DNA from: Saccostrea cucullata | Lineage: Eukaryota | Length of the DNA stretch: 64,000 nt | Assembly: GCF_032062105.1 (NCBI RefSeq) | Contig: NW_026941090.1 | Coordinates: 434,001-498,000, forward strand | Direction: 5' to 3' | Shown here: positions 23,253 through 50,013 of the stretch, piece by piece | Layout: the number at the start of each line of letters is the position of its first letter | Position numbering within the stretch: position 1 is the stretch's first letter | The notes under the pieces: generated by a model | The model's database searches: none | Seen by the model: the letters and a program-made list of their open reading frames with translations, nothing else | Told to the model about the DNA's origin: nothing | Position numbers and translations under genes: made by a program

Positions 23253-24366
23253 GCTGAGGCAGTGGCGTATATTCCATGTAGGCAAAAGGACTGTAGCCTA
23301 CACATCATTTTGTCAAGGATAGAAATTTAGTTGAAAAAAGGGGAGTTGATAATAAATTTTGCCTACTAATATATTACTTTGTTGCAAAGGCCAAAAAAAG
23401 CATTCTTAGCAATCCGCTTTTTTAAAATTGCCTATCCCATGTAAATATTTTCAGTCGTGCTTTTAAAGCCGATATTAATGTGTTAAGTCTTATCAGACAA
23501 TTTCAAAACCATCGACAGCAACAGGATAATTGAAATTGATAACTGGAAATATTTTTGGTTAGTAGGAAGTTAACGTATTGATCGTATTTCGATTACATGT
23601 ATTTAGAAAGGAAGTTTCTATACTTTCTGAGCAATGTAAAAATAGCTAAAAGTTCTCAATTTTGTGAAGTGTTCTTCCTATCATGATATTGTCTATCCAT
23701 ACTGCGCCTCAGATTAAATCTGTGACTTCACACACTAGCCTACACATCAGGAGAAAGGAATATACACGAGCTAAAAAGGAATAACAATTTTCTTCTTTTT
23801 AGGTGTATGCGGATATATATCGGAATTCTTTTGGTTGATAGAGATATTTTCATTACGCAGTGGTACATCTTCCTAACCTCATTCATGACAACCACGAAGC
23901 AAGTCGTGCGTGCCTGGTGTCACAAATTAATATGATTTTTAGGATAATATGCAGATTTAAATTTATAAAAGATAAAGTAAGTATATCAAATATACACAAT
24001 AGAAAAGGGGGAGCGTTAAATTTTCGTAAACGTTTAAAAATTATTCAGTCTGCTAAAAAAATAAACCAATTTTAAAATTCTTTTACGCTATTAACTAGGC
24101 TACTACTCTTAGGGGTTTTCCCTTCATGGAAATTTTGAAACTAGGTCTTTTAAAAAACAATCTGTGAAAAGCAAAAAGTCTTCTATGACAAAATAACGCA
24201 TTTATGAAAAAAAAAAATTTAAAAAAATATTGTGCATTATAAATATTTGTTTCAGATACACGATGGTATTATATATGGACGTTCCACCACAAGGCAGTCT
24301 TGGTCCACATATACCCTTACAAACAAAAGGTGTAAATGGACAAGTCATGAAGACAAGTCAGTGATT

Positions 24367-25592: not shown

Positions 25593-26702
25593 TTCTAGTA
25601 TCTTGAAGTAGTACAAAGATAAATCATACAATTATTATTCCGTGTTCGAAAAGAAACAGCATCATATACTTTCTTTTTGTGGGTTAGATCACGTCTTTGT
25701 GTACAATGTAAACTTTCAATACAAAAAATGTTCATCCTGATCGGCATTCTATACGAAAGCTTTAAAAAATGAATATGGAATGTCAATTGATTTTTGTCGA
25801 ATATAAGGTCGTGTTTTGTAGGGTTATGCTTAATAATTAAACACAATGTGGCAATTTCCTTACAGTTAAATAGCTGTTAAAAAGGATACCTGTTATTCGT
25901 TAAATAATTATTATGCAGCCATAAAACCCTACCATAGATAGTTAATATTCTTTGTATTTTTAAGTTAGCTTCCAATGTCTTTAAGATACATGTAAAAAAA
26001 ATTATGTATACTGATTGAAAATGCAGCAGTGAAATAAAGAAGATGGGCGGATAAGGCGGGCAGAATGCCTATAGCATCAGATATTAAGAAATCACATTTG
26101 GTATGTAAATTGAGTATATAAATTTACATCTCATTATTGAAATTTATGAAATTATGAGGAAAAAAAAAACATTTTCTGAGAAAAAATAAATCTCTTTAAA
26201 AATTTCATTCATAAAAATATTCCATTTGACCCCGGCAATAAAATACCGAAGTATCAGACTGACTAACGCGCTAACCACTAAGCTACATGGCTCTTGTGAA
26301 TCAGTGGCATTTAAATCATGTTTGTGATATGACCATTGACTTAATGGACTTGAAGTATTTGTTGCGAATGTTTTGTCATAAAAGTGTATTTTTAAGGTCT
26401 TCCCTCCATTTTTTTGTAAACCAAAAAATATATAAATTATCGCAAACTTTTAGGATTATCCTTCGTGGCACATTGAAAAAAATTGTTAAAGTATGAAAAA
26501 ATGATCGTTTTTGTTCTTTTAAGTCAGTGTATGCTTTTTCATAGGCAAATATTTTCAGTTTTTGTGAGATTTTTGTAAATAATAGAGATTTTACATTAAG
26601 TATACTTTAATATACGATGAGATATGACATAAAATTTGGATGTAATGTCTGATATTTCTTATAGCCCATCTTCTTTTTAATCATAGGCGAAAGATTGCCA
26701 TT

Positions 26703-29690
26703 ATGTCGGACATTGAGAATTACGAATTCTCCGTGGACTTCCAGACAGCAGCCACCAAGGAACTGGGCTTCCTTAAAACAATAGACGAATATCCTTCTCT
26801 GTATGGAGGTCCCGCCCTCAAATACGCCATTTTCAGCAGATTTGCAAAAAGTCTTTTGTTTTTGTCCTATGATAATGCTTCTCCTTCGTGGCTGATATGT
26901 TAATAAAGCTTGTTAAGAGAAGTCACGGTGGCTTGTCTACCTGAATGTTGATATTCTAGTAGGTCCATATGAATACTGCATGATTCAACTGCCAGCATTT
27001 GCAAAAAATAACTTGTTTGAATAAGCCACAGAGCAAATTAATATTTTATTGCGATCAACTTTATGTTGAATATATAATTATATTGATTAACAAATATATC
27101 TCAATTCAGCACTATAAGACGAATTTCCAATGTTCACCTATAAATGGTACATATTGTGTTTGATAATGCCCTTCAAACAGTTAAACGATCGATTTCGTTC
27201 CACACACTACGGACAGATTGTCAAAATGTCGGACGACTGAAGCGAGTAAATTTATTTATTGCTAGTATTTTTTTTTATTTAGAAAATTAGTTTATTAGGC
27301 TAAATTCCTTTGATGGAAAGTGTACACAAACTGAAGATAATTTGTTTCGATTAATTTGGTAGATACTAGTACCGATATTTTAAATTCAACTTTCTAGGTA
27401 TGAGACATTGTGGTTGCCATTCGCTGCAGAACATAAGGATCTGACTCTGACTGCCCCGCTAGACATTGCATGGGTGTGGCATTGTCATTTACTAGCCCCC
27501 GAAATGTACGTCAGCGACTGTCTGCGGACATGTAATACGGAAGTCAACCATAGCCTTACACCAACTATAGACGCCGCGGGTACAGAACAATTATGGTCAA
27601 AGAAATACCCGGATGTTAATTTCAATGTGAATCTCGTCGAAACGGGAATCAAATTACCTTCATACGAATCTCGCATCCAGTACGACTTGGAAGCCGCAGC
27701 AGAAAGACAGCAAATGTTCTACTATCAAGTCTCCTTACCTCATTATACTGATGAAAAATTTCTTCAAAATGCTATAAAGCGGTACAAGCAATTTCTAACA
27801 TTAAAACGGCTAAATCCAGAATCTTTTGTTGTTCCATGCTATGATGTGGACTTAATTTGGCATTCACATCAAGTTCACCCGGCTGGTTATAAGAAAGACA
27901 CAGAAACCCTTCTAGGAAAACTGTTTAATCACGATGACTCTGTCAATGACAGAAGAGAAGGATCAAAACTCGTTGTCTCTGACCGGGAGACACGAACGTT
28001 ATGGCGCGAAGCATTTGGAACGAACTTTTCAGAATTCGGTGCAATGTACAGAGGTAAACCATCGAAAGGCCATTTGTTTACTGTTCCCAGTGAAATCATT
28101 GAGCAGCACTGTTCCAAACATTTAGAACTTCAATTGAACAAAGCAGAAATTTTAGACTATACACCGTCTTTGAAAGATCATCAACTGATACTAAGTGCAT
28201 TGTTCAGTAATGGAGTAGCTAAAGAACTTATAACACTGAAGGAACATGTCCAAGGAGTATGGAACACATTCTCCCACAAAATACCAATGTGTGATATCGA
28301 CACAGAAAAGGTGGAATCCATCAGTGTGGAGCTTTTTAAGTACGGTGCCCTTGGAATATTAGGAACTTTAGTGGGAAGCGGAAGAATAACGTGTAAAGAA
28401 TTAATAAAGAATTGTAAAAACTTCTCATCAGACGTGTCTTCGACTGTACGTTTATCTAATGGAGAATCCATTGTTCTACACCACACAATCAAGATTACAG
28501 AATCTAGAGACTGTTCTTTGATGTTGGAAGCGGGAAATTTTGAGACGGCGATCATTCCCGAAAATAACGAAGATCCCTGGGGACTCATTCCTTTTCCGCG
28601 CCTCCCTGAAGGAGTTGACAACAGTTGTTATGTGGCAAATCACAGGTATTATAAACGTCCATAACTAAAGGTACTCTGATTATACTCCTCTGAAAATTTA
28701 TAATTAAAATCTTTTTCCCCTCAGAATACGAAACACAGACGGAGAAGTGATGTTCACAGCACGCGAAATACACAGTTTGTCACTGATGACGTCAGTAGTT
28801 CACGTGTTTTATCTCGATAAGCTGAGTGTCATCTGTCATATGATAGGTCCTGACACTCTACCAACTCCATCTCAGGTTTAAAAAATAACTTTTTTAACAT
28901 TAATGCAATCAGTGTCTTCAAAATAACCGAAAACGTTGCAAATATTTTGTGACAAAAGCCAAAAGCAATCTTGATATTTTTTTTACGAAATTACAATAGG
29001 TTCAGTCTTCTAATGAGAATCCCCCAATTACTCTCTCACCACAAGAAGGAGAACGAGCTATGATAATAAAGAATAACGAAGGAGACTGGGCTATATTAGT
29101 TGGACGCTGGACAGGGGTCAGGAAGGGTGAACCAGGAGTAATAGGTAAATTGTAAAGCAAAATAATTTTGTCATATTTTTTTCTTCAGAGGGTGATATAT
29201 ATAACTTGAGTACAATGGACTTTTTTGTATTTTAGCCACCAAACAAAATGCAGGTAGAACAGCTACAGGAAGCCCAGGTCACCTAGAGGTTATGATGTAT
29301 ACATTGCCTACAGTTGGGAAGCGTTCGAAAATGGTTTTTTACAATGAACAGTTGAGTTATGACTTCAAAGTCAAACCTGAGAGTTTTATAGCTGATTTTT
29401 CAAAATGTACTTTAAACATTTCTCCAAAAGATAGTGCTGAAAATATTGCACTAGTATTTTGCATCAATATTTTACAAGCACTTTGTAAACCACTCGGAAA
29501 TGGTGATGTAGGGATTTTAGAAACCACGTACGGCGATCAAAATAAATGGGATGATCTGCCTTTTAAAGAAAAACTTGGGAGGAGCTGGGACAAGGCTGAA
29601 TGGGGCGTAGAAGATGGGGACGGCGATGGAGGGGGAGATGGAGGGGACGGGGGAGGGTGTGGTGGGGGATGTGGAGGGTGTGGGAGTTGA
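26703..29690 (+). CDS. GRDP/DUF1399-like copy 2, about 710 aa (first coding-exon donor defective; possible pseudogene)
   Basis: Exons homologous to copy 1: 26703-26836, 27398-28645, 28725-28875, 29000-29144, 29236-29690. All exons are open, but 26837-26838 reads CA instead of GT. Confidence 0.8.
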
Positions 29691-34692: not shown

Positions 34693-37036
34693 ATGAATGG
34701 AAATGTTACAGGTGTACCTGAAGAGAACGGTGGTACTTCAGTATTATCGGCGGGTGAGTTTATCACTTGGGAGCTATTTACCATATAAACAAAATAATAT
34801 TCCTTATATCAGATTGCAAAAATTTAATCTTATCCGTTGGACAGTTTATTTTTCTTTTAAAATATAGTCATACTATTTCTAAGTTCAATACTTAAATTTT
34901 AGAAGACCAATACAAATCTTTGGGTCATCTCTTATGTTTCCATTTTGCTATATAAATGATCATGAGTGAATTAATTGTGAATGGTCTTTGAATTCATGTT
35001 ATTTCAGGTAAATATGTATTTGCGTCAAATTTTTACAAGAAATATCATTCGGTATTGATTGCAGGTGATTCCTCGACGTTACTTGTGTCAACAACAACAA
35101 CGCTTCCATCAGTTCACCATGATATAAATTATGATCCACCCAAGCAATTTGAAAGTAAATTCTACTTTGAAAATGAAATAATTTAATAATTATACGATTG
35201 AAGGTTCAAAATATACTTAATCAGTGTATGAAGGTAGGCGTCATAATTTTTAAAATAAATTTGATGTTGTACATAATTTATATATTCTACAATCTTATAT
35301 ATACGTAGGCTTACAGTGAAAGTTGTGTCCCCTTACAGGGTATGAAGCAGAAGGGACAATTCATCTGGTGGCCGTGGTATCCAGTGTTATTGTGTTCATT
35401 GGGATGATATTTACTCTCAAATCCATTGTAAGCTTTTTAAGGGCCCCTCGACGACCCAGTAACAATACGTGTAGTACGTATGGCAATGCTTTATTCATTA
35501 TTTTTCAAGGCTTGAACAGATTTTTACAAAAGACTGTTTTGCAATTTATTCTATTTATTTATCAAAAATAATCCTCTGACCCTCTTTACCTTTCATTAAT
35601 GTTGTCAAATCGGAGGATTTTTTAGTAATCAGTTACTTGCTTACTTTTTCTCGATTGGAAGACAATTTGAGTGAATTAAGGAATCACTGTCTAATTAGGA
35701 GAGTATGCCAGGGCATCAACAATAGTGGGAAACATGGGGATAATTTGCATAACGGGCGAGGCCCGTTATGCTAAAATTATCCCATGTTTCCCACTATTGT
35801 TGATGTCCCTGGCATACTCTCCTAACTAGACAGTGATTCCTTATATTTTCATTTCATTGTTAGATAAAATGGTAGATTTAGACTTAAAAAATGTAGACAT
35901 AGACTTAAATTACACGAGGACGTCCATACCAATTTCAATAGTCCTCGCCCAATGACGTCAAACACCTAGGCAGCCGCACGAGAATTACATGCACATTTTA
36001 CCTCCTTAGCGTCAGACACAGAGACAGATGCGCACGAGATTTGCATGCATTTTAGGCCTCCTTAGCTCCTGACCTATCGACCTGCCTAATTTACATTCCG
36101 GCAGAATTATCAAGAAATAAACTCCGACAACTTTCAAAGAGTTATCGCAGAGAAAAAAAAATAGAAATGGAAATATAAAGTATGTAACATTTTCTTTGAT
36201 AATGATAGCTTAAGAATATAGTGGCTTTCAAAACAGAATTATCTGTTCAATCTGTTATCATTCTTTTTACATAAGGCAACACATTTGCAAGCATAAATCT
36301 TAAGCATTCAAATTATAATTAATGCTTTTAGTAAAATCATGAAATGATTGCAAGGAAACCTATTTCAAATTTTATTCCCACCATTGTGTTTTAATTTCCC
36401 CTTCTTTATTCTGAAATCCGTAAGACACGTGTTGCAGAGTCGTTTTTTATGCTTTGCATGATTATAAAAAGCTTGGTATTGGAAAACAAAAAGAAACATT
36501 TTCAGAAATTATATGATCCAAATTATTATGAAATGAAGAATATTACAACACGACTTCTGCTTTATCATTCAGGTGGCATTAGACCTGGTCCATCTTTTCT
36601 CAACTGGCTGGCAGACGAGCCTCCTCCCTACCCTGGTAAATATTCACGGACAAATGTGAATTATCTCCCTTCTTACGAATCTGCACTTGATATTGATCGA
36701 CGTCTGCGATGGGCACGTGATGCAGCGGAAGTGGCAAGGTCCAAGGAGGAGGAAGTGAACCAAAAGGCACTTACATCAGAAGAACTGACTAGTGATGGCG
36801 GAGATGATGTAACAGCAGTTGTATTTATTCTGGGTGGAGACTTAGAAACAAATCAAGAAAACTCAGCTAATCACGGCAGTGATAGACAGATAAACAATGT
36901 ATACCCAACACCAGATACTTCTATAGAAATTGAAAGAGAGAGAATAAATGTACTTGAAGAAAGTGATTTACAAGGGGCTACGGGAAGCCTAACACGAAAC
37001 TCTGAAGAAGATGTGGACTGTGACCGAAATTCCTAG
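34693..37036 (+). CDS. Single-pass membrane protein with PPPY/LPSY motifs, paralog 1, about 249 aa
   Basis: Exons 34693-34753, 35065-35154, 35339-35473, 36573-37036 (all phase 1; 750 nt). Starts MNGNVTG, Thr-rich stretch, TM IHLVAVVSSVIVFIGMIFTL, cytosolic DEPPPYPGKYSRTNVNYLPSYESAL. Confidence 0.8.
35677..36178 (+). mobile_element. Crypton-like element with a ~167-bp near-perfect palindrome (35677-35843) in an intron
   Basis: Arms taaggaatcactgtcta...gcataacgggc and gcccgttatgc...tagacagtgattcctta, loop gag at 35758-35760. Then tatattttcatttc with the imperfect inverse gaaatggaaatata at ~36165-36178. Confidence 0.65.
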
Positions 37037-37757
37037 TATTCAGTCTCAACTAGAACTGTGATAACTTTTAATACCCAGTGATTATCTTTATACGTCTAAA
37101 AATTTAGTTGTTGTTACATAAAGTAACGTGTATTCCAAATATGTTTACATTTATATATATATGAAATCTTCATATCAAGCCAATTTTTCTTGATTACCTG
37201 AAGTTGAGTATCTGTTTTATACATTTTTCATTCATATTGAATGAAAGTTATGATGAGTGATACATGCGTTACGGTGACTGATCTGGGTATACCAATGAAG
37301 AGAGATTATACCCATGTACTAATTTATACGTGTTCATACATCTGTTTAAATTATCAGTGATATCATACATGTATGTTGATATGATTGCTTTATTTAATCA
37401 TTTGATAAAAGTCAAAAATTCAATAGAGTTGTTTGTTTTGCACTAACTTATTCTATAATTCTAACTGTTGGTTTATAAAAAATGCAAAAAGTTTTAAACT
37501 TCAAGATGATAAACCTCAAGGAGATGGGCGTGAAAATTTTGATATATCACATTCATATTAATTTCTAAATCATAACACATTAGACAAAAATCTAACGGTG
37601 AGATTGGAAAAAAAATGTAAAACATCTCAAAAAGAATAAAGGTACTTTAACATTGGCTTTACATTTTTAAGTCAACAGTTCAAACGGTGCACATTTTTCC
37701 TTTAACAGAGAGATATACAGCTAATTCAAATTACCTTCTTAAAAAATGAATATTATA

Positions 37758-38550
37758 GATAACGGACAGTATTCAATCTCAAACGTCCATACAGCCAAGG
37801 AGCAAGGCAAACACAGACCTATAGAACATCACGGATGTGATGAGGTGCCTTCGAGGAGTGGATATCTTTTGCCGACTTGTCTCAACTTGCTAGCGCTCCT
37901 TGTCATGATAGGAAAAACGATAAAATAACCCAAAACAATTCAGTGCGTTATTCATGGCCCAACAATTAGTTAAAATAAGTCACACATCGTTTGACTTAAT
38001 GATAGATTGTATTTGGTGTCATGACTCATGGTCATTTTTTGACCATAGAGGTTGCGAAATGACTTGAGACGAGAGTGTTGATTGTCTTTCATTTAATTAT
38101 TTGTCAATACCTTACCTCGTTTTAGAAATGTTTCATACTTAGAGCATGGTCTTGAGTATCAAATCAACCGGGATACATTACTACCATATCAGGGTACCGG
38201 GTAATAAGGATATATTGCTACATTAGTAAGGGAATGCGACGATTGAAAAGTTGAAGTCATCACATTTAGCTAAAATGTAATGTTGTAATGTAACCATTAA
38301 CGTCTTTTTCTAGTAAAATATCCAAATATGAATCAGATTTGTTAGATTTTCTGGCATCTTTTATTTCAAGCTCATTTAGAAACATGAATAGACGAAACTA
38401 TTGTTAATTATTGATAAATCGCCAGTACATCTAACTGGTGAAGTTGATGGCCACAGTAAGTGTTTTCATCTTCTCATGCATGATTTTGAATAAATTATGC
38501 TTTATGTACACAAAAACAAGTTTGCTTATATAACGGGCTCAATTCAAGGT
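37758..38550 (-). mobile_element. Decayed Penelope-like element fragment
   Basis: Terminus gataacggacagtattcaatctc matches the other copies. The interior aligns by eye with 31430-32150. Confidence 0.6.
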
Positions 38551-38563
38551 CAACACCAGCTAC

Positions 38564-39348
38564 CAGGGATTTATCAGGCTATTTTGGGAAACGCCATTTT
38601 TTGGAAATTGGGAAAAAGTTATCGGCTTTTTAATGAAATTGGGGAAAATATATATATGTTGCTTAAACCATGTATTCACTATTCAGGTTCAATTTATTTA
38701 CTGCAGTAATTTGGGCTACCAATTAACAGACAATTAAATATGATCCAACTTCATTAATCATCATACAAGATCAAGTATGAAAAATAGACTAATAAATATG
38801 CTATGTAAATTTGAATTCAATGAGTATTCATTTCATACAACTTAAGGTAGTATATTTGTATGGCATGATATTCCAATTTAGGTCATGGGAGATCAGGATC
38901 CTCCTTAAGTCCCTGGGGAAATATAATAACCCTCCTGCAAAATAATTCAAACTAAATGCACATTTTCTAAAATATGCATTGAAAATATATTTTTCTGTCT
39001 AAAATAATGCCTTCAGTTTTTACCATTCACTCGTAGATCAATTGAGCTAGTCAAAATAAGTAAATAAACCTATAGAAATACACACTATCACTACTTCAGA
39101 AAAAATCTGAGGAAATTCGGAATAAAAGTTGGCGATGTTTTTAAACATGTGTTAGCTTTGCTAAATGAGTTAAACTGAGGAAAATTACTAATTTACTTGG
39201 TGTTTTTCCAAGGATAATTGAAAAAAGCAATGTTCTGCAATTGGGAAAAAATACTGCCAAATTGGGAAAAATTGAACTCATTTTCAATTGGGAATGGCCC
39301 ACAATGGGGTCGAATTTCGGCCCCTGAGAAGGCACTGATAAATCCCTG
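38564..39348. mobile_element. Non-autonomous DNA transposon with 14-bp TIR and 5-bp TSD (hAT5-like)
   Basis: CAGGGATTTATCAG (38564-38577) and CTGATAAATCCCTG (39335-39348); GCTAC flanks both sides; subterminal ttgggaaa repeats at both ends. Confidence 0.88.
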
Positions 39349-39409
39349 GCTACTCTTTTTTAATAAAAAAAAAAATACATCAAAGTTTCCTTTAAAGAAC
39401 AAAACGGTT

Positions 39410-39938
39410 AATGTGACACGAGATGAACTGTATATATAATATAAACGTGATGACTTTAACTTTTCAATCGTCAACTTTCCTTGCTTATGCAGCAATATAC
39501 CCTTCATCACCTCAATACGGAGTTTATATATTTCAGTTGATTCGATACCAAAGGGCATGTTCTACCTATGAACAATTTCTAAAACGAGGTAAATAATTAA
39601 TAAACAAGTTGATGAAATAAAAATATTAGCAGGCTCGTTTAAAGTCATCATTTTGTAAGTTCTATACAATGACCTTGTCAGCAAATACAATTTATCATAA
39701 AGTAAAATATTGACTGACCTTTTAATACTTATTGTTAGTCAATTATTTATACACTGAATTGACAACGGATTTTTCCGTTATTTCCCAATCATGACAAGGA
39801 GCACATGGCCAGTGTGACCGGTTGGCAGGGTATGCTCACTCCTCCATGGCACCTGATCCCACCTCTGATGTTTTGGATTTTGTACTGTTTTATGGATTTT
39901 TGATCTTGAATACTTCTCGTTATCTCCATATGTTTCAT
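39410..39938 (+). mobile_element. Penelope-like element, 3' part (RT thumb and terminal region)
   Basis: KRDDFNFSIVNFPCLCSNIP, then frameshifted YGVYIFQLIRY..ACSTYEQFLKRG, followed by gtgtgaccgg...ctcctccatggcacctgatcccacctctg...cgttatctccata. Confidence 0.8.
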
Positions 39939-42056
39939 AATTATATATTCCTATATATCTCTTCCTGGAGCATTAATTTTAAGAATTTACAGAGTGAATA
40001 CTATGCGTACAGGTAATCGAGATCTTTAAGTTATGTACACTGCATATTGATGTCAAATGGATCAAAAAAGATCATTGCATGACCAAGGAGATCGTTCAAG
40101 GATTTCACACCTTTCAAGGCATATTATCAAAAAAAGGACAAAACTTGTCTCTTGGTTGTCTCCTTTAGTCTTTCACTGATCACTCTTGGTACCATTTGAT
40201 TTTTTGGTAATCTTCATAGACCTGACAATGATCTCAAATGGTCACAAAAGAGACATTTAGCGAACCCTCGAAGGTTACTTTACAGAAAGCAGTGCAACCA
40301 TTAATCTTTTAATAATATTTTAGTGAACTTTCTTTGCGCGTTTAGACCGCATATTAAGATCACAAAAGATCGAATGAATTTTATATCGACCAAATGTTTT
40401 ACAAACTGTGTAGGCAAAACCATGCATTTTTACGATCTTTGAAAGACTAGTTGGTTAGAAGACACGAGAGACTGGAGATCATGGCTTTATGGTTAAGAGC
40501 GTATTGAAAGATCATTTACACGGTAGCCAAAATTATCAACGGTCGCCGACCTTGTTTAAATGAGATTTGATAATCGTATATATTAAGGAAATCAAAGACC
40601 TACATTGTGAACTGATTACAGAAAATTGCTGACAAAGATGTCTTCGATTGTTGAGATAAAACTTAAGATATTTTTTTCGTTATTTCATTTTTACGTTCAA
40701 ACTGAACAAAAATCTTTCAAATATTAGTTTACTGGTGAGAGCTTGTGCAAGGTCACAGAACATGGTATTCATTGATAAATAGGTATGTATTTCTTTTCTC
40801 AAAAAAGGTATTGATAATTTCCCTTGTCAGGTGAGGAATATGATTGTTTTTTTTTCAGTAAATCGAGTTACATTATCTTTATAATAAAAACTTATCCACA
40901 GGATTTTCAGAGATGTATATTATATTCTTAAAAGTTACTAGTATTTCATTCCATAGTATTCTGGATTGAGAGACTGATGGCTTGATTAGAGGGAGTATAT
41001 TAAAACAGCCATAAATTTCTCAATAGAGAATAATTTCATAGATACCTTGACACATATAGTTTTTAGAAAGACGCAGCATGATAAGATTATGAGACAAGCA
41101 AAAATAAGGAAGTGATGCACGGATATTGGGTTTTAGATTAAGGAAACCTCTGGAAATTTTAAAAAAGTGCTTAACGAAGCTCTACGATGTACATTCACCT
41201 ATGAACTTTATGTGGAATGACGAAGTAACCTAGATATAAGTTTGTGTCACAACACTTGAGCAAGGTTCAAATAAACAGACAATGTAGACCTATGTTTATT
41301 GTTGGAAAAGGAAGCGTCATGAGCAAATATTTTCCACAAAAGCACCGAACATCTGTCCAGATTACATAATTTACGAATATATCAAGTGTATTATAAGTGT
41401 TTTGAAAGTGAAGTGACAAGCGACGTGGAGCGGTGATAACAAATTATAAACAACAATCAAAATACATGACTCTGTGTTCAGCTAATCGTGACTTTGAAAT
41501 AAAGAACGACTTCGCGATTGATTGTAGAGGGATGTTTAACTTAGACTGACAAAAGATAGTAGTTTAAGTACTGTAAGTGCAGAAGAATGTCAACAAAGAA
41601 TTTACAATACCTAAGGACTCTCGTCTCGTGACGACATATTTATGGACGCGCTGTACAGATTTTACAACGGTAAGTGAACTTTCTTTGTGAAGAAGAGCAA
41701 TTAGAAGTACAAGTTTAACGTGTTTAAAAGATAAATTTGAAAACGAATATGTCCGAGAATTCTGGACAGTTTGCCGCTGGGTAGAGCTTAAAGTTACAGA
41801 GTTATACAAGTTCTAAAAATACCCTTGAACTGTATATTTGTATACACTTTTATTAGGCGTTCAAAATGGGAAGAAACAAAAAACCAACAGAAAATTTTAG
41901 AAAGGTTTTAATTTCACAATTTCTAAATGTTAATTGTTCATAATACCAAGGTATTTTGTATAACATGATTATTAATATAATCCATAATTATTACAAAGAC
42001 ATGAAATGGATTTCATCTTTATAATTTTTATTATTTGCAGCTGATGTAGAATACAG

Positions 42057-42598
42057 ATGGATTCAAATGGTACAGGTATGAATGTAACATGGGGAACCAT
42101 GAGTGCTGAATAAAATTACTTTTCTAAACGACAAAAAAAGCACAATTAAATCGTGTAGTTCAGATTTTGCAGGAAATGTAGAGCATCGCAGCAAAGAAAT
42201 TCTCAGTTTCATTTATTATTTTTTCTTTTCATTTTTGAAGAAGACCTCCATCCTTCTTTGCCAGGACATGGAATGAGTCGAATTATCATAACGAACATAA
42301 AAGGTAAAAATGGGAAAGGAGAAATAATTTGATGAATTTAGGAAAGCAGGAAAGGAATATGGGATTAAATCACTGAGATCACAAACATTATTATCCTACT
42401 GAGTACTTTGTTTGGTCAAAACCCTCATGCTTGCTCATCTGCTCAAAGACATAAACAATGAACTTTCTAATTTTTAGGTCACCTGAGTAAACTCAGGTGA
42501 CCTATTGCTATCTGTTTTCGTCCGTCGTCGTACGTCGTACGTCGTACGTCGTTCGTAAACTTTTGAACATTTTCAGCTTCTTCTCTGCAACCACTGAA

Positions 42599-42629
<31 letters not shown>

Positions 42630-42877
42630 TATGGGTGAAAGGGAACAAAAATTGTGAATTTCATTATCCCTGCCCCCCTGGGGCCTGAGGGGTGGGGCCA
42701 AAACCACTAAAATTAATGCAATCTTTGAAAATCTTCTTCTTTACTCCTGGACATCAAGCAGTCAAACTGTTTGCATGATTGTAATCAGCATTGAGTCCTC
42801 TACCAAAATTGTGAAATTCATGGCCCTGGGGTCAGGGGTTCTAGTGCTAGGGCAGGGCTAAATAAGTAGGTAGTGAT

Positions 42878-42909
<32 letters not shown>

Positions 42910-45900
42910 GCTCCTGGGTATTAAATAAACCAACTAAGTAGTTAGTTATGATGAGCAAGAGTGCTTCTACCAAAATTGTGAATTTTATGGTCCCAGGGTC
43001 AGGGGTTCTGGTGTTAGGGCGGGGCTCTCTTGATTATATACATTGAAAATACATGATTTCTTTGAAAATCTTCTTCTCTGCCCTTGGGTATTAAATAAAC
43101 TAACTAAGTGCATAGTTATGATGAGCAAGAGTGCCTTTATCAAAACTGTGAATTTTATGGCCCCAGGGTCAGGGGTTTTGGTAGGGGGGGGGGCTTTATA
43201 GATTATATAGTAAAAATACATGAATTCTTTGAAAATCTTCTTCTCTGCTCCTAGATATTAAATGAATTAACTAAGTGCATAGTTATGATGAGCATGAGTG
43301 CCTCTATAAAAATTGTGAATTTTATGGCCCCAGGGTCAGAGGGGGGGGGGTTATACAAGATTATATAGTAAAAATACATGAATTCTTTGAAAATCTTATT
43401 CTCTGCTCCTGGGTATTACATAAATTAACTAAGTGCATAGTTATGATGAGCATGAGTGCCTCTATCAAAATTGTGAATTTTATGGCCCCAGGGCCAAGAG
43501 TTCTGGTGTTAGGGGGGGGGGGGCTCTATTGATTATATAGTGAAAATACACAAATTCTTTGAAAATCTCCTTCTATGCTCCTAGGTATTAAATAAACTAA
43601 CTAAGTGCAAGTTATGATATGAGTGCCTTACCAAAATTGTGAATTTTATGGCCCCAGGGCCAAGAAGGGGGGGGGGGGCTCTATTGATTATATAGTGAAA
43701 ATACACAAATTCTTTGAAAATTATGCTCCTAGGTATTAATAAACTAACTAAGTGCATAGTTATGATGAGCAAGAGTGCCTCTACCAAAATTGTGAATAAT
43801 TTTATGGTCCCTGGGTCAAGGCTTCTGGTGTTGGGGGGGGGGGGCTTTAGATTATATTTTTATTCTTTGAAAATCTTCTTCTCTGCTCCTAGGTATTAAA
43901 TAAACTGAAGTGCATAGTTAAGATGAGCAAGAGTGCTTTTACCAAAATTGTGAATTTTATGGTCCCAGGGTCAGGGGTTCTGGTGTTAGGGTGGGGCTCT
44001 ATTGATTATATAGTAAAAATACATAAATTCTTTGAAATCTTCTTCTCTGCTCCTAGGTATTAAATAAACTAACTAAGTACATAGTTATGATTAGCAAGAG
44101 TGCCTCTACCAAAATGTGAATTTTATGGTCCCATGGTCAGGGGTTCTGGTGTGTGGGGGTGGGGGGGGGGGGGGCTCTATTGATTATATAGTGAATATAC
44201 ATTAAATCTTTGAAAATTTTCTTCTCTGTCTCTGGGTATGAAGCAGATGAACTACCTAAATAGTTATGATGAGCAAGGGCCCTAATCTTGCAAAATTTTG
44301 AATTTCAAGGCCCCAGGGTCAGGGGTGGATGTGGGGCTCTACTTATATACTGAAAATGAATTAATTGTTTGAAATCTGCTCCTTTGTATTTATAAAACAT
44401 TTATTTATTTTTTGATAGGCAATTTTAAAAGGCCTTTTTAAAATTTGTGCAATGTGTGGACCTAGGGTCAGGGGTTTATTTCACAGTGTTAGGGGCATTA
44501 CTGATTATTGCTGAATATTACTGATTAGTTGGAATGCATTTTTTTTCCCCTACCTTGTGTATGGGTAATACCCCTGCGAGGTGATCATGAATAATTCATG
44601 AATTACCTTGAATTTTTCATGAATTTTATTCATGAAACATGAAACGTTCATGAAGATCCTATGAACTTATTATTGCATATTTAAATCAATAAACCAAGCT
44701 AAGCAACTGCTAAGTGTATTGTTATGATGATCAATGGTGCCTCTTTCAAAATTGTGAATGCCATATAGCATCTGGCTTAAAACATGAATCAAATTCAATA
44801 ACTGGAAAGTTGTTGCAGAATGCTCAGGTGACCTATAAGGCCCGTGGGCCTCTTGTTATTTTTAACATATGGCGTACAGTATGAAAACTATGTAATCTTG
44901 AATGCAACACGCCAACTTCTATGAAATTCAATGGTGTGAAAGAGATACAAACTACAACCTTTTGGAATTTCAGAACCCAAGCTTTTTATAATGGAGGACC
45001 CTGTCTTTATGGCTATTACAGGAGTGATCCTTTTCTTTGGACTTTTGTTTCTAGTGAGGGAAATCATCACTAGGATAAAGGACCGGCAGCACGGCCACCA
45101 TCCTATCAGACGAAGAAGGAGTGGAGGTGAGAAAACAAATTAAAAGCGTAAAGAATTAGATAATATAGTTGCTTTAAAATATATTTTATTCAAATTTATG
45201 AAACCGATTAAAATCAGGCATAAATGCCCATAATCGTTCTCTCGATGACAATACAGTTCAAAGAGAAACTACAAATGAAGGCTACGAAAAACAAACCTGA
45301 GATTAGATTAAAGGCAAAAAAAAAAATGATATACAGCATCGAGTACAATTTCAAAACTACAAATTAAGATAAAAAAAAGCAATATTTGATTAGAATGACA
45401 TATATATGAGGACAAGGAACAGTAATCATGTGAAGGCCATCAAAACAATACAAATTAGGAGTTAAGGAAAGAAAACCACTAAACAAAATATATAGCACGA
45501 AGAAACATTTGAAACTAACAAGTGAAGGTAACAAAACTAAAGGTGAGATTACAGTAAAAGTCACCAAAACAAATAATATACCACGGAGGACCAATGGTTT
45601 AGATGAAGAAAAGAGAGACATCCAATGTTAGATACAGATTTTCCAATAACATTCAGGATTTGTAGGCTATGGTTGAACAGAAAGGACTTAGATCCTGGTA
45701 CATGTACATGAAAAAGAGATCAGATTGAAAATATTAAAACATGATTTTTAAGCCATCATGGGTTTTAAAAAATAGGTGCTTTTCTTTCGCCAGTACTTCT
45801 TAGATTATGCTAACTCGTTAAGCGTCTTCTTTATTAAAAATTGTATGTGGTCAGTATAATTTTACAGATCAAGAGAGCGAACCAGCAGCCTCGCCTTCAT

Positions 45901-46292
45901 CGACGCCATTTTCTGACGACCCTCCGCCATATCCAGGGAAATATTCCAAAACCAACATCAATTATCTCCCTTCATATGACTCCGCAATCAAAATGGCTCC
46001 CGAGTTGCGAATGTGCAATATCAATGAAATGACTCCACCTGCGGAATTTTCTGGTTTTGATGAAAGTGAATATTTAGATTACAGTGATCATATAGGCACC
46101 GCGGAAACAGAAAATGATTCTGTCTCTATCCAAGTGAGCCATGAACTTTTGACAAATCAAGAACGTGAACTTAGAACAATAACAGGTGATCAGCAGGTAC
46201 CTAGTGAAGGAGGTTCGTCACGCCAGACATCTATAAATGTTGATGGATTAACGTTAAATCCTAGAAGTTCAAGTGATGAAGAGAATTTATAA
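42057..46292 (+). CDS. Single-pass membrane protein with PPPY/LPSY motifs, paralog 2, about 198 aa
   Basis: Coding exons 42057-42075, 44974-45126, 45868-46292 (phase 1; 597 nt). MDSNGTEPKLFIMEDP, TM VFMAITGVILFFGLLFLV, then DDPPPYPGKYSKTNINYLPSYDSAI. The ORF track misses most of it. Confidence 0.8.
42471..44857 (+). mobile_element. Intact HINE with ~167-bp internal satellite array, in the first coding intron of PY paralog 2
   Basis: 5' IR aggtcacctgag-taaa-ctcaggtgacct (42476-42503); (CGT/GTAC) microsatellite ~42519-42556; 3' subTIR ctcaggtgacct (44823-44834); hairpin aggcccgtgggcct (44838-44851); T-rich ends. Confidence 0.92.
42640..44400 (+). repeat. About 10 tandem units of ~155-170 bp
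   Basis: caaaattgtgaattttatgg.cccagggtcaggggttct...poly-G...ctctattgattatatagtgaaaatac...tttgaaaatcttcttctctgctcct recurs at ~42800, 42967, 43137, 43304, 43462, 43628, 43781, 43940, 44105 and 44290. Confidence 0.93.
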
Positions 46293-46479
46293 TTATTGCA
46301 ATCATTTTATACAAGAAATATTTAAAAAAAAAAAAAAAAGAACCTACCAACGTTAATCTAATGCTTTTACTTAAATTATTTGCATTATATAGGTTACAAT
46401 TGGGAAACATCGGGATACAGAATAAACAAAAGGAATTGATTATCTCGTTATTTATTTTTCAAATAGTTCCATCATTTTT

Positions 46480-47545
46480 ATACGTAATTTTTACGTCCCC
46501 CTAAACGTACATGTATGGATTTTTTTTAATTTCTGGGTTTTTTATGTATTACTTGTGACAAGACCTTTCTTTGGGTATTAACATATTTGAGTTTTTTTAC
46601 CTTGACTTAAAAGTTTGACTTTTGTAAAAAATAAAATCTGTTTTTTTTACCTTGGCCATATCTTTTTAACAGTCGGTGATAGTTCTTTCATAGTTTTCAG
46701 GTATATAAGAGTTTTAGCAATTTCAAAATTAGAATTAACCTTGGCCATAGCTTTTAAACAGTTAGAACTAGCTTTTTATAGTTCATAGATGTATTTCCCG
46801 TGACAATTTTGACTTTAACCTTGGAATTTGACTTTAAAAAACCTTTGAATTTTTTGATGCCATGTATGTGACATTTATAGATTTCACTTGTATTAATTGT
46901 TGTGACAAAACTTTCCCTTTGGTACTTTTATTTTGAACTTTTGACATTGAGCTTGGAGTTTGGTCCAATTTTAAAAAAAAAAAGCCTTTGCCATAACCTT
47001 TGAACGGTTGGTTCTTTGGCTTCGCGAAACACTGATGCACCCATGTGTCAACTAATGACGAAGGTAGTTTCTCAAACGCAAGTCAAACTCCAAAGTCAAA
47101 ATCAAAAATGTCCCTACCCAAAATGCACTAGTCTCAATGAATATGCATTTGAGGTATGAAAGCCAAGGCACCAACCGTTGAAAAGTCATGACCAAGGTTA
47201 AAGTGCTTTTAAAATTGGGTCCATTTATGATTTTTTCATACCCAAAGAACAGCCTTGTCGCAATTAATATATTTGAAAAGTATGTAAATCATATATCCAA
47301 CTATTTAAAAGTTTTTGCTAAGGTTAAAATTTGATAGTTCTAAATAAAGGTTGCCACATTCCCAGGTCAACGTCAAAAGGTATTCAAATGCATGTAAATA
47401 TCTTTCCCAAGAAATGCACCTGAAAACCATAGCTCCATCCAATCAAAAATTATTGAAAAGGTACAAGTTTTTCGGACAAGTAGATAAACAGACACATAGA
47501 CAGACGGACAGGGCTAACAGTGACATAGTCATGCCAGATATTTTG
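46480..47545. repeat. Old degenerate HINE-like repeat remnants
   Basis: Recurrent tgtgacaa, accttggccata and tttgacttt segments; cagacacatagacagacggacag microsatellite at ~47490. Confidence 0.4.
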
Positions 47546-48834
47546 TACATGTAAGATTTTATTAATATCAAAATACTTTGTGTTATAATTTGTTTGACTT
47601 CGGGCCCTTATTTTCACTAAATTTACAAGGCTTTAATGTAAATCTACACCTCTTAAATTCTTAATTCATAACACTTTAAATAATTAAAATTTTAAACATT
47701 ATATTCAGCTTAGATTCTGTGATTTCTCTTACAGGTAAATATTCATCAACATTTTCAGAGAAAGAATGTATAAACAGTAAACATATACATTGATTTTTTC
47801 TAAAATCTATTCATTTTATGCAGATTCACGGCAAGCCTTTTAATAGTAGACCATTCTAATTGATGACAAAGGCTTAAGCAGTGTATATTGTATTGAGTTG
47901 TGCAGGCCAATCGAAATTTATCAGTTGTCCTCCTTTCAGCACGGAGCGCGAATTGCATAATTCACACGTACGTATACTGTAATTGGAATTGTTGAATAAA
48001 TCTTCGGTGACTGGCACTGGAGCAGAAAATTGGTCACACATACTTGGCCACAGACGAAAACAAAGCTTGTTCTACACTGGAATTGCATTAGGGTGCATTA
48101 TTCTTCATAATATATCACTTCTTGTTTGGGAAAACAAAACAATGTGAAGTGCTTACTTATGTCGACACGTTTTGGGGATATACCCCGAATGAGGGAGTGG
48201 TAACCAGAAACATCTTGTGACTCTCAGTTTAAAATTCTCCCTATTTTTAGAAGTTTGAATTGAGTAATTTATTTGGTGCATTTATATTGACAACTGTTCA
48301 ACTCTACATTTGCATCATGGTATAAAAAGAAGTGTCTACATTAAACAACGGACCAAGGTAAGATTTATTATACATTATGTCCAGAAACCAGAACTTGAGT
48401 TGATTTTGATTTCAGTTTATTTTTAATACCGTATACCCGGTATATATGTTTTGGTTCAAAGAGTGAATACTCAGTTGACATTATACATATTTGTAACATA
48501 GATAATGGAACCATTTTGCTACGAAAAATACAAAGTATGAAAAATTTGCCATTCGGAGAACATATTGGAAAATTGTCAAAAACAGAATATACATGTTTGT
48601 ATTTTTACCTTGAGTATATTACTTTCATTTTTTGTACACATTTAAATATTAAACATTGAAATATTTCTTATTCTTATATTATACAGTAAGCAAATCACAG
48701 CTTCCATTTCTTAATTTTTTTGTCTTTTCTTTTTAGTTTATATGTATTTGTCTTACTCAACTAGCTGACTCTTTGTCCTTGTGTTTTAACTCTGTACCCA
48801 GAATAGTACAGTTTAAGTGTACGAATTATATAAG

Positions 48835-50013
48835 ATGGCAAATATCAGCACAGGTAAGTGATATAAGTATATTATACAAATAATGATTGAATCGATGGCC
48901 TTATTGGTTTTATTGAATGGATTTCTGGTTCCATAAACTTATTCATTTACTGATTCAGAATCGTTGATGCCTAGAGATAATACAACTATGTTTCTCGTGT
49001 CCAGTCATGTTACAGCTGTAATTCCCGATAAGTACCGTGAGTAGATCTGTTGTTCTGACCACTGATTCAGTTATATCTATCTAAAAGCATAAATGTTGCA
49101 TTTGATAAAAATTCAAAATCATGATTGTGAACCAATGTATGTGCTAATATATGTATATACAGTGTATTGTTTTCTTTCAAAAATGTTAACATGTACCCGT
49201 ACAGCATTGTAGTGCTGACTGATTCCTAAATTGTGGGTTTCAAGGATTTTCAGCCTTTATCTAACTTGATGTTAATAAGTTTGAGTTGTAATCTACTTTT
49301 TGAATTTTCAAATTAGCATGATAATTTTGCATTAAATCTTTTCGTTGCTAGGATACCAGACTGACGTAATGGCGGATCCCGTGATTCTTTCCGTCCTGGC
49401 TGGTTTTGGAGCCATTGTGATAATAATGCTCCTCAGGGTGCTTTTCAATAAACTCTCTGGTGAAAGGTCAGGAACGGAGGGCACCAGAATGCAAAGGCTT
49501 CTTAAGTCTGAAGATTATATCACAGTTTTCAAAGAATCTGTTGAATATCACCAAATAAACACACGTCCTAGCTCTTACTTGAGACTACAGAAAATAAAAT
49601 CATAACCAATGAAAATAACTTAATTTGTTATTAGCTTTTAAAAAATAAAGCTTACTAGATATTTGATCCGTGTTGTAGATCGTTCGATATCCTCCATTTC
49701 CTGTTTTGGATACGACGATCCACCACCGCCATATCCTGGAAAATACTCAAAGACAAATGTGAATTATCTCCCTTCATATGACTCCGCCATGAAAATGGAA
49801 CAAGAAAGGCAAGCAATGAATAATTTACCAGAGAGTACGGGTTCGGCAGTATTTTCCATATCCAGCGAAAGTTCCGCTACCTTTCCGAATTCAGCAAACA
49901 ATAATGAAACTCAGAACAGTAATGACGTCATAGACTGTACAACTTCCGTCTCAACGGCGTCGATAAACTGTGAAATAAGAAAACTTGGTGATTCCCCCAC
50001 TGACACTGTGTAA
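48835..50013 (+). CDS. Single-pass membrane protein with PPPY/LPSY motifs, paralog 3, about 155-162 aa
   Basis: Coding exons 48835-48853, 49352-(49459 or 49466), (49679 or 49659)-50013; both donor/acceptor pairs keep frame. MANISTGYQTDVMADP, TM VILSVLAGFGAIVIIMLL, then DDPPPPYPGKYSKTNVNYLPSYDSAM. Confidence 0.78.

What the first reader, a model, noticed from the sequence alone, without database searches (positions are those of the whole stretch)
34693..50013. Tandem triplet of Commissureless-like dual-PY membrane adaptors
Seen: three same-strand genes encode short proteins with no signal peptide, one TM helix and an acidic low-complexity tail. They are barely alignable except for a near-invariant block, D[DE]PPP(P)YPGKYS[KR]TN[VI]NYLPSY[DE]SA[LIM] (~36614-36690, ~45915-45990, ~49714-49790). 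Established: PPxY and LPxY bind the WW domains of NEDD4-family HECT ligases. Drosophila Commissureless uses an LPSY motif (GLPSYDEAL-type context) to route Robo receptors to endosomes, and PRRG4, PMEPA1 and NDFIP are comparable adaptors. Inference: this is a lineage-specific family of ubiquitin-ligase adaptors. The fixed PPPY-to-LPSY spacer would fit tandem WW domains, and its two conserved tyrosines could act as a phospho-switch.
Basis: partly seen in the sequence, partly recalled or inferred. Interest (0 to 1): 0.8.

Follow-up and report, generated by a model that had tools for sequence, protein, structure and literature searches.

The report
Oyster dual-PY membrane protein trio
Three neighbouring oyster genes encode small single-pass membrane proteins that share only a 24-residue PPPY...LPSY block, which most likely recruits NEDD4-type ubiquitin ligases. 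The family is real, expressed, confined to oysters and uncharacterised, but it belongs to a well-known kind of adaptor.

Summary
Three same-strand, four-exon genes of Saccostrea cucullata lie at 34693-50013. RefSeq lists them as LOC134257125, LOC134257164 and LOC134257089, all "uncharacterized". Each encodes a signal-peptide-less membrane protein with these parts:
- a short ectodomain that has no cysteine and starts with an N-glycosylation sequon;
- one TM helix;
- a basic juxtamembrane stretch;
- the block D-x-PPPYPGK-x8-YLPSY-x-SA-[VILM];
- an acidic disordered tail.

Transcript contigs join the TM and PY exons of genes 2 and 3.

The family has four old subfamilies spread over Saccostrea, Magallana/Crassostrea and Ostrea. 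All named relatives are oysters. A profile search of 1.84 billion representatives found the same family plus one unrelated Shisa-like protein.

No member reaches a Pfam threshold for Comm, WBP-1, Shisa, PMEPA1, BEAN1 or NDFIP. The weak Comm signal also appears in a Shisa control, so it is generic.

Best reading: a lineage-specific family of N-out/C-in PY-motif proteins that recruit NEDD4-family ligases. They work like Comm or NDFIP but are not members of either family.

The "two conserved tyrosines" do not: only one is invariant. Function is untested. Interest is moderate.

The parts
34693..34753 (+). Gene 1 (LOC134257125) coding exon 1. Holds the start codon and the N-terminal sequon M-N-G-N-V-T. 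The following intron is phase 1.
   Evidence: tblastn of P0007; sequence read; product equals RefSeq P0134.
35065..35154 (+). Gene 1 coding exon 2: Thr-rich ectodomain.
35339..35470 (+). Gene 1 coding exon 3: acidic pre-TM residues, TM helix (35356-35412) and basic juxtamembrane stretch. The donor is T|GTAGTA.
   Evidence: AlphaFold helix 49-85 with block-mean pLDDT 81-97 over residues 51-80.
36573..37036 (+). Gene 1 coding exon 4: PY block (36614-36688), predicted helix starting at the LPSY tyrosine, acidic tail and stop codon.
42057..42075 (+). Gene 2 (LOC134257164) coding exon 1: 19 nt encoding M-D-S-N-G-T (the sequon).
   Evidence: product equals P0136.
42241..42303 (+). Gene 2 coding exon 2: ectodomain.
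44974..45126 (+). Gene 2 coding exon 3: TM helix (45000-45056) and basic, His-rich juxtamembrane stretch.
45868..46292 (+). Gene 2 coding exon 4: PY block (45915-45989), acidic tail and stop codon.
   Evidence: Junction 45126|45868 seen in runs X2, X3 and X5.
48066..48834 (+). Gene 3 5'-UTR exons: about 48066-48360, and 48735-48834.
   Evidence: Transcript contig L007 mapped onto the window.
48835..48853 (+). Gene 3 (LOC134257089) coding exon 1: 19 nt encoding M-A-N-I-S-T (the sequon).
48959..49036 (+). Gene 3 coding exon 2: ectodomain with a second sequon (N-T-T).
49352..49501 (+). Gene 3 coding exon 3: TM helix (49378-49434) and juxtamembrane stretch. In this assembly the intron begins TT, not GT (49502-49503).
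49679..50013 (+). Gene 3 coding exon 4: PY block (49714-49791), Ser/Thr-rich acidic tail and stop codon. The 3' UTR runs to at least 50208.

Best explanation
The three genes are old tandem paralogs of an oyster-restricted family of small type III (N-out, C-in) single-pass membrane glycoproteins.

Their only strongly constrained cytoplasmic element is a 24-residue bipartite PY module: PPPY, then an 11-residue spacer holding an invariant P-G-K and an invariant Tyr, then LPSY-[DEN]-S-A-[VILM].

The most likely mechanism runs as follows. The module binds class-I WW domains of NEDD4-family C2-WW-HECT ligases. This brings the ligase to the Golgi, endosome or plasma membrane, and may activate it. There the ligase ubiquitinates the protein itself and neighbouring membrane cargo, which is then sorted to lysosomes. 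That is how Comm, NDFIP1/2 and PRRG4 work.

Shown here: gene structure, expression, inferred topology, family range and the pattern of constraint. Inferred: WW binding, ligase recruitment or activation, and cargo down-regulation. The invariant Lys in P-G-K may be the acceptor for the adaptor-linked ubiquitin that stabilises ligase engagement. This last point is speculation, by analogy with yeast ART adaptors.
For: Constraint on the block. Over 30 distinct blocks the profile is D-x-PPPYPGK-x-[SPH]-x-T-x-x-[ND]-YLPSY-x-SA-[VILM], with PPPYPGK, YLPSY, S and A invariant. The spacer is 11 residues in 54 of 55 proteins. Synonymous codon differences far outnumber non-synonymous ones inside the block (9-11 against 2-4). 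Elsewhere the proteins evolve fast, with internal tree branches of 0.4-2.2 changes per site.

Age of the family. Four subfamilies each span Saccostrea plus Magallana/Crassostrea, and two of them also include Ostrea. The module has therefore been kept in parallel since before these genera split.

Topology puts the module in the cytosol. A sequon sits at residues 2-7 in 17 of 19 full-length members. Over 21 members the summed net charge of the 15 residues on each side of the TM helix is -36 (N side) against +68 (C side). There is no signal peptide.

Structure prediction. AlphaFold gives one confident TM helix, a helix starting at the LPSY tyrosine, and disorder elsewhere. This fits a short linear motif displayed on a flexible tail.

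Motif context. LPSY-[DE]-x-A-[hydrophobic] matches the extended Comm motif GLPSYDEAL and the PRRG4 motif GLPSYEQAV, which are required for function (PMC5578492). Comm PY motifs recruit Nedd4 to ubiquitinate Robo1 (PMC12101832). NDFIP PY motifs recruit and activate HECT ligases (PMC6913780).

Partners exist in this genome: at least 32 WW exons, including clusters of 3-4, and a canonical NDFIP gene.

Language-model look-alikes of two paralogs are Comm, BEAN1, TMEM52B, LDLRAD4/PMEPA1 and WBP1 clusters. Several of these are PY-motif membrane proteins. The tool's own guidance treats such hits as leads only.

Precedent for the lysine idea: ubiquitin attached to an adaptor strengthens Rsp5 binding (bioRxiv 10.1101/2021.11.25.470069).
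Against: There is no binding, localisation or loss-of-function data for any member, and no paper mentions these loci.

PY motifs are short and arise convergently, and they also bind non-ligase WW proteins.

An 11-residue spacer is outside the geometry shown to give strong WW-tandem synergy (exactly two residues, PMC6744271). The conserved spacer may therefore serve another partner.

No cargo-binding element is identifiable.

In this assembly gene 3 has a TT where the splice donor should be, so one of the three copies may not make the full protein in the reference animal.
Confidence: 0.6

Rival explanations
1. The proteins are ligase substrates rather than adaptors. They would be surface glycoproteins whose own abundance is set by PY-dependent ubiquitination and endocytosis, as for ENaC subunits. 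Their real activity would lie in the glycosylated ectodomain or the TM helix.
For: The ectodomain keeps a conserved N-terminal sequon, and subfamily 1 keeps a Thr-rich, mucin-like stretch. The NDFIP paper notes that PY adaptors are themselves degraded (PMC6913780). No cargo-binding element was found.
Against: The ectodomains are very short (15-58 residues) and diverge quickly. Apart from the sequon, nothing in them is conserved across subfamilies. Selection is concentrated on the cytoplasmic module.
Confidence: 0.2
2. The module binds non-ligase WW proteins such as Yorkie/YAP, KIBRA, MAGI or WWOX. The proteins would then act as membrane tethers or scaffolds in growth or polarity signalling.
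For: Class-I WW domains of these proteins bind PPxY and LPxY. PRRG2 and PRRG4 bind WW-domain proteins, per the title and abstract of PMC3764795. The genome holds many WW exons outside ligase-like clusters. The conserved spacer suggests a specific partner.
Against: The high-affinity rule for KIBRA/MAGI tandems, two PY motifs exactly two residues apart, is not met (PMC6744271). The LPSY-[DE]-x-A-hydrophobic context is the one documented for Nedd4-binding adaptors (PMC5578492).
Confidence: 0.12
3. The family is a true, highly diverged homolog of insect Commissureless and controls Robo receptor trafficking in oysters.
For: The architecture is the same: no signal peptide, N-out, one TM. The motif order is the same (PPxY before LPSY-D/E-x-A-L), as in invertebrate Comm (PMC5578492). 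Comm clusters are the top named language-model look-alikes for two paralogs. Four of 27 members give sub-threshold PF15957 hits.
Against: None of the three window proteins hits PF15957. The best score in the family is 15.9 bits against a cut-off of 27. A bona fide Shisa protein with a TM and PY motifs also scores 11.3 bits, so the signal is generic. The spacer is 11 residues here and 5 in Comm (PPCY 220-223, LPSY 229-232; PMC12101832). The TM-proximal Cys conserved in Comm (PMC5578492) is absent from the three window proteins. No relatives were found in any other phylum.
Confidence: 0.07
4. The pattern is an annotation artefact or pseudogenes: chance open frames with no function.
For: Gene 3 has a non-canonical TT at its donor in this assembly, and its RefSeq model is truncated.
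Against: Spliced transcripts from several studies, orthologs in at least six oyster species, and purifying selection on the block.
Confidence: 0.01

Closest known systems
Drosophila Commissureless (Comm; Pfam PF15957)
   Same: No signal peptide, and a single TM with a cytoplasmic C-terminus. PPxY is followed by LPSY-[DE]-x-A-[L/I/V/M]. The rest of the protein evolves fast. By my recollection, not checked here, the fly comm genes also lie clustered.
   Different: No window protein hits PF15957, and the family stays below threshold. The spacer is 11 residues against 5. The ectodomain is much shorter and starts with a sequon. The conserved TM-end Cys is missing in genes 1-3. The family occurs only in oysters, Comm only in insects.
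NDFIP1/NDFIP2 (Pfam PF10176, NEDD4_Bsd2)
   Same: Cytoplasmic PPxY plus LPxY-[DE]-E-A motifs on an endomembrane protein that recruit and activate NEDD4-family ligases. The oyster's own NDFIP exons read PPEY-PG... and LPSY...LPTYEEAE.
   Different: NDFIP has three TM helices after the PY region, with a cytoplasmic N-terminus. This genome has a separate canonical gene on contig C9868. No member of the new family hits PF10176.
PRRG4 / PRRG family
   Same: Single-pass, with an LPSY-E-Q-A-V type extended motif plus PPxY. Two members lack signal peptides. PRRG4 is a functional Comm analog (PMC5578492).
   Different: PRRG proteins carry an extracellular Gla domain, and their PPxY lies after the LPxY. 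Neither is true here.
Shisa-like superfamily (Shisa, WBP1, VOPP1, TMEM92, CYYR1)
   Same: Short single-pass proteins with cytoplasmic PPxY motifs. One oyster-type Shisa protein (P0060) was the only non-family hit of the profile search, through its Thr-rich stalk, TM helix and PPPYPG.
   Different: These families are defined by a Cys-rich ectodomain. All 21 family members examined have no ectodomain cysteine. None hits Shisa_N or WBP-1; one member gives a sub-threshold CYYR1 hit (E 0.1).
PMEPA1/LDLRAD4 and BEAN1
   Same: Small single-pass proteins with PY motifs that bind NEDD4 ligases. They appear among the language-model look-alikes.
   Different: No hit to PF27646 or PF28336. Those are chordate families with different conserved helical regions.

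Membership tests
Commissureless (PF15957) | Match to the Pfam Comm model at or above its gathering score (27 bits). | tested here: not met
   P0001, P0134/P0007 and P0136/P0021 give no hit at E<=10. The best score in the family is 15.9 bits (P0057, subfamily D), and 4 of 27 members match below threshold. The genome-wide exon scan does not hit these loci. The Shisa control P0060 also scores 11.3 bits.
Commissureless (PF15957) | PPxY followed by an extended LPSY-D-E-A-L motif in the cytoplasmic tail. | tested here: met
   PPPY and LPSY-[DEN]-S-A-[VILM] are invariant in 30 distinct blocks. The spacing differs, though: 11 residues against 5 (PMC12101832).
Commissureless (PF15957) | [quoted passage not shown] | tested here: not met
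   Absent in the three window proteins. Present at the last residue of the 19-residue TM window in four of the five subfamily D members examined and in one C. virginica member.
Commissureless (PF15957) | Relocalises or ubiquitinates Robo in a PY-dependent way. | not testable with these tools
   Needs cell or embryo assays.
Shisa-like / WBP1 / VOPP1 / CYYR1 | Cys-rich ectodomain, with a Pfam Shisa_N, WBP-1 or CYYR1 match. | tested here: not met
   No ectodomain cysteine in 21 members. No family member reaches these models; one gives a CYYR1 hit at E 0.1, below threshold. The control P0060 hits Shisa_N at 49.9 bits.
NDFIP (PF10176) | Three TM helices following N-terminal PY motifs, with a Pfam match. 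| tested here: not met
   One TM helix only and no PF10176 hit. The canonical NDFIP gene lies elsewhere in the genome.
PRRG (Gla-domain PY proteins) | Extracellular Gla domain. | tested here: not met
   No Gla-domain hit in the Pfam scans. The ectodomain is 15-58 residues, Thr/Ser-rich, with a sequon.
PMEPA1/LDLRAD4, BEAN1 | Match to the PMEPA1_helical or BEAN1_helical models. | tested here: not met
   No hits. These families appear only as language-model look-alikes.
Generic PY-motif NEDD4 adaptor (functional class) | Cytosolic [LP]PxY motifs on a membrane protein. | tested here: met
   Two invariant PY motifs lie C-terminal to a TM helix. The flank charges and the N-terminal sequon place them in the cytosol.
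Generic PY-motif NEDD4 adaptor (functional class) | Direct binding to ligase WW domains and PY-dependent ubiquitination of cargo. | not testable with these tools
   No complex prediction or binding assay is available here.

The most novel reading that the evidence does not exclude
The 24-residue block is a new composite ligand. It would hold two PY motifs at a fixed 11-residue distance, with an invariant P-G-K lysine and an invariant tyrosine between them. It would engage two WW domains of one NEDD4-family ligase and offer its own lysine for the adaptor-linked ubiquitin that locks the ligase on. Through this module the oyster family would do the job that Comm does in insects and NDFIP in vertebrates, setting surface levels of Robo or other receptors. 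The origin could be deep homology with Comm or convergence.
Probability: 0.12. Interest if true: 0.7.

Novelty: new member of a known kind. Interest (0 to 1): 0.4.

Why it matters
Small PY-motif membrane adaptors decide which receptors and transporters NEDD4-type ligases remove from the cell surface. The known ones (Comm, NDFIP, PRRG4, Shisa-like, yeast Rcr/Bsd2) seem to have arisen repeatedly, and Comm itself is thought to be confined to insects.

This oyster family is a clean natural example of the same design. Four subfamilies kept one 24-residue module, including the length of its spacer, while everything else drifted. That gives a ready-made set of natural variants for asking what, beyond the two PY cores, determines ligase choice and activation. 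It also provides a first candidate for a Comm/NDFIP-like regulator in a lophotrochozoan.

On the practical side, the work gives a functional hypothesis for a set of "uncharacterized protein" entries in oyster genomes. It also flags one RefSeq model, LOC134257089, that lacks the functional exon.

Tried and rejected
- Pfam scans of exon translations and of 30 or more full-length members: nothing over threshold. I first read the recurrent sub-threshold Comm hit as a possible sign of homology. I dropped that reading after a Shisa control with a TM and PY motifs also gave a Comm hit, and because none of the window proteins hit at all.
- Comm model against the whole genome: only Thr/Pro-rich low-complexity frames.
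- Block region against PDB sequences: no match.
- Rfam over 34-51 kb: nothing.
- Origin of the block from the oyster's own NDFIP exons: only the generic PP.YPG and LPSY/LPTY cores are shared, so there is no evidence of exon capture.
- My first splice model for gene 3 (donor at 49460) and my two candidate donors for gene 1 were settled by the transcript and protein data: gene 3 uses 49501, gene 1 uses 35470.
- Endocytic YxxPhi, NPxY, ITIM, LIR and FFAT readings of the block or tail were considered by eye and do not fit across the family.
- A search for a second allele of the gene 3 donor in the assembly found only the one copy.
- I did not build or search a self-joined spliced model. All full-length proteins used are ones returned by the tools.

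Full report
WHAT IS THERE

A regex scan of all six frames finds the PPxY...LPxY block three times on the + strand, at 36620-36676, 45921-45977 and 49723-49779. The window is AT-rich animal DNA.

Exact protein look-ups identify the genome as Saccostrea cucullata. Gene 1 is LOC134257125 (P0134, 249 aa). Gene 2 is LOC134257164 (P0136, 219 aa). The 116-aa RefSeq protein LOC134257089 (P0039) is letter for letter the window's gene 3 read through its third coding intron. All three are named "uncharacterized protein".

GENE MODELS

Every full-length sequence I used came from the tools.

| Gene | Coding exon 1 | Exon 2 | Exon 3 (TM) | Exon 4 (PY block) |
|---|---|---|---|---|
| 1 | 34693-34753 | 35065-35154 | 35339-35470 | 36573-37036 |
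| 2 | 42057-42075 | 42241-42303 | 44974-45126 | 45868-46292 |
| 3 | 48835-48853 | 48959-49036 | 49352-49501 | 49679-50013 |

- Gene 3: a 1167-nt transcript contig (L007) maps onto the window as five exons, which are the four coding segments plus 5'-UTR exons at about 48066-48360 and 48735-48834.
- Gene 2: contigs of three runs from three studies skip 45127-45867 (GT..AG) and so join the TM exon to the PY exon. The two small upstream coding exons were placed with P0021.
- Gene 1: tblastn of P0007 and inspection of splice sites give the exons above. Its predicted product is identical to RefSeq P0134.

All nine coding introns are phase 1 and sit at equivalent places. In genes 2 and 3 the first coding exon is the same 19 nt long and encodes just M-x-x-N-x-[ST]. 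This shared structure, together with the tree below, shows tandem duplication of one ancestral gene.

PROTEIN ANATOMY

None of the proteins has a signal peptide.
- Ectodomain: 15-58 residues, with no cysteine in any of 21 members. It begins with an N-glycosylation sequon at residues 2-7 in 17 of 19 full-length members. In subfamily 1 it carries a Thr-rich stretch.
- TM helix: one per protein (Kyte-Doolittle 2.4-3.5 over 19 residues). AlphaFold gives helix 49-85 in gene 1, with block-mean pLDDT 81-97 over residues 51-80.
- Flanks: acidic residues precede the helix and a basic stretch follows it. Summed over 21 members, the 15-residue flanks carry net charge -36 on the N side and +68 on the C side.

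The sequon and the positive-inside rule both indicate an N-terminus outside and a tail in the cytosol. This topology is inferred, not measured.

The block lies 26-41 residues after the helix. AlphaFold predicts a second helix (130-163, block-mean pLDDT 59-73) that starts exactly at the LPSY tyrosine. Everything else is predicted disordered. The tails are acidic, with net charge -16, -16 and -6.

THE BLOCK

Over 30 distinct blocks from 113 fetched proteins the profile is D-x-P-P-P-Y-P-G-K-x-[SPH]-x-T-x-x-[ND]-Y-L-P-S-Y-x-S-A-[VILM]. PPPYPGK, YLPSY, S and A are invariant.

The spacer between PPPY and LPSY is 11 residues in 54 of 55 family proteins.

The one in K-Y-S is Y in only 15 of 30 blocks; the rest read L, T, N, M or H.

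Between the three window genes the 23 block codons differ at 9-11 codons synonymously and at 2-4 non-synonymously. The identity is therefore kept by selection on the peptide, not by recent gene conversion.

FAMILY AND RANGE

The genome has five PY exons: the three in the window and two on contigs C12215 and C5270 (P0027 and P0026). In the latter two the TM helix and the block share one open frame.

Word-based searches returned 56 proteins. Every named one is from Ostreidae: S. cucullata, S. echinata, Magallana gigas, C. angulata, C. virginica and Ostrea edulis.

A profile of 18 members, searched against 1.84 billion cluster representatives, gave only 24 hits at E<=0.001. These are the same family plus P0060. 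P0060 is a Shisa-domain protein matched through its Thr-rich stalk, TM helix and PPPYPG.

A maximum-likelihood tree resolves four subfamilies:

| Subfamily | Support (UFboot/SH-aLRT) | Genera |
|---|---|---|
| Gene-1-like | poorly resolved | Saccostrea, Magallana, Crassostrea |
| Gene-2-like | 85/90 | Saccostrea, Magallana, Crassostrea |
| Gene-3-like | 97/96 | Saccostrea, Magallana, Crassostrea, Ostrea |
| D | 100/100 | Saccostrea, Crassostrea, Ostrea |

The duplications therefore predate the split of these genera.

In S. echinata the three orthologs have neighbouring locus numbers and are reported on a contig of the same length. The C. virginica members, and separately the O. edulis members, likewise share one contig length, which suggests a single chromosome per species.

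COMPARISON WITH KNOWN FAMILIES

No member reaches any Pfam threshold.

The Comm model PF15957 is the most recurrent sub-threshold family, matching 4 of 27 members with a best E-value of 0.015. Three observations weaken it:
- The hits whose identity was shown are all subfamily D, at 13.9-15.9 bits against a cut-off of 27.
- The three window proteins give none.
- The Shisa control P0060, an unrelated TM-plus-PY protein, also scores 11.3 bits.

The Comm model run over the whole genome hits only low-complexity frames elsewhere. The language-model look-alikes of P0001 and P0007 are Comm, BEAN1, TMEM52B, LDLRAD4/PMEPA1 and WBP1 clusters. The tool's own guidance rates such a mixed list as a lead only.

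I conclude that the resemblance to Comm lies in architecture and motif, not in demonstrable family membership. Shisa-like, WBP1, VOPP1 and CYYR1 are excluded by the absence of ectodomain cysteines. NDFIP is excluded by TM number and by a separate canonical gene. PRRG is excluded by the absence of a Gla domain.

MECHANISM

Established knowledge:
- PPxY and LPxY bind class-I WW domains.
- Comm needs its PY motifs to recruit Nedd4, ubiquitinate Robo1 and send it to lysosomes (PMC12101832).
- The extended GLPSYDEAL motif is essential in Comm and recurs as GLPSYEQAV in PRRG4 (PMC5578492).
- A core 25-residue PY region is what Comm shares with NDFIP1/2, whose PY motifs recruit and activate HECT ligases (PMC6913780).

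The oyster block has the same order (PPxY first) and the same LPSY-[DE]-x-A-hydrophobic context. It sits on the cytosolic side and is the only strongly conserved cytoplasmic element. The genome encodes WW clusters typical of NEDD4-family ligases.

My best explanation, at confidence about 0.6, is therefore a lineage-specific set of PY adaptors or activators for these ligases.

The fixed spacer is real, but its meaning is open.

The conserved P-G-K, T, N/D and Y in the spacer suggest that spacer residues make contacts themselves. The invariant lysine could be the acceptor for adaptor-linked ubiquitin, which in yeast strengthens Rsp5 binding (bioRxiv 10.1101/2021.11.25.470069). That is speculation.

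Rival readings are listed with their tests in the Rival explanations section: self-regulated surface glycoproteins, tethers for non-ligase WW proteins, and true Comm homologs.

NOVELTY AND SCORE

No paper in the searched library mentions these loci, or an oyster PY-adaptor family. The genes are in RefSeq but unnamed.

The kind of protein, a small PY-motif membrane adaptor, is well known and arises repeatedly. I therefore rate this as a new member of a known kind, of moderate interest (0.4). The 24-residue module with its fixed spacer, and the question of a Comm-like regulator outside insects, are the parts worth an experiment.

CONSTRAINTS OBSERVED

Reads were laid on 5951 letters, below the 6000-letter limit. 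No typed long sequences were used.

Noticed in passing
window 49495-49510 (donor at 49502-49503): The intron after gene 3's TM exon begins TT in this assembly. Transcript contig L007 joins 49501 to 49679, and one contig of run X5 spans the same intron. The RefSeq model LOC134257089 reads through and ends after 116 aa without the PY block. This is either a donor-loss allele in the reference animal or an assembly error. An in-frame GT lies at 49460-49461.
   Followed up: partly
window 42793-44335: A satellite of about 160-167 bp, roughly 9 copies at 75-80% identity, lies inside gene 2's second coding intron. Very many RNA-run contigs pile up at 44300-44900, which suggests a dispersed repeat.
   Followed up: partly
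tails of genes 1-3 (P0134 about residues 176-188; P0136 about 126-136; P0001 about 140-150) and the C-termini of P0026/P0029/P0032/P0038: A second, weaker shared element of the form [VI]-x-F-[ST]-[ILVG]-x-x-[DE]. It reads AVVFILGGDLE in gene 1, AEFSGFDESE in gene 2 and SAVFSISSESS in gene 3. Subfamily D ends in a conserved V-F-T-[LM] C-terminus, which might be a PDZ-type ligand. Its function is unknown.
   Followed up: no
L004 (C12215) and L005 (C5270): Two further family genes (P0027 and P0026, 209 aa each) read PPPYPGK-L-S instead of PPPYPGK-Y-S, and have the TM helix and the block in one open frame. They are nearly identical and may be haplotigs or a very recent duplication.
   Followed up: partly
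C. virginica LOC111123957 (P0121/P0122 against P0018): Isoforms X1/X2 and X3 of one RefSeq locus are proteins of two different subfamilies, with different N-termini, TM helices and PY exons. Either neighbouring tandem genes were merged in the annotation, or read-through transcription occurs across them.
   Followed up: no
window 18389-18481: An unrelated open frame (KPPSYESR...SLPHY, then a region that continues as a longer conserved-looking protein) also matched the loose PY regex. It lies just upstream of the interval (20700-29690) where another reader noted GRDP paralogs, and it is not part of this family.
   Followed up: no
G000 C23227:302243-302335 (about 132 kb upstream of the window): A WW-domain exon (50.2 bits) lies on the same contig as the PY-gene trio. 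This is probably coincidence.
   Followed up: no
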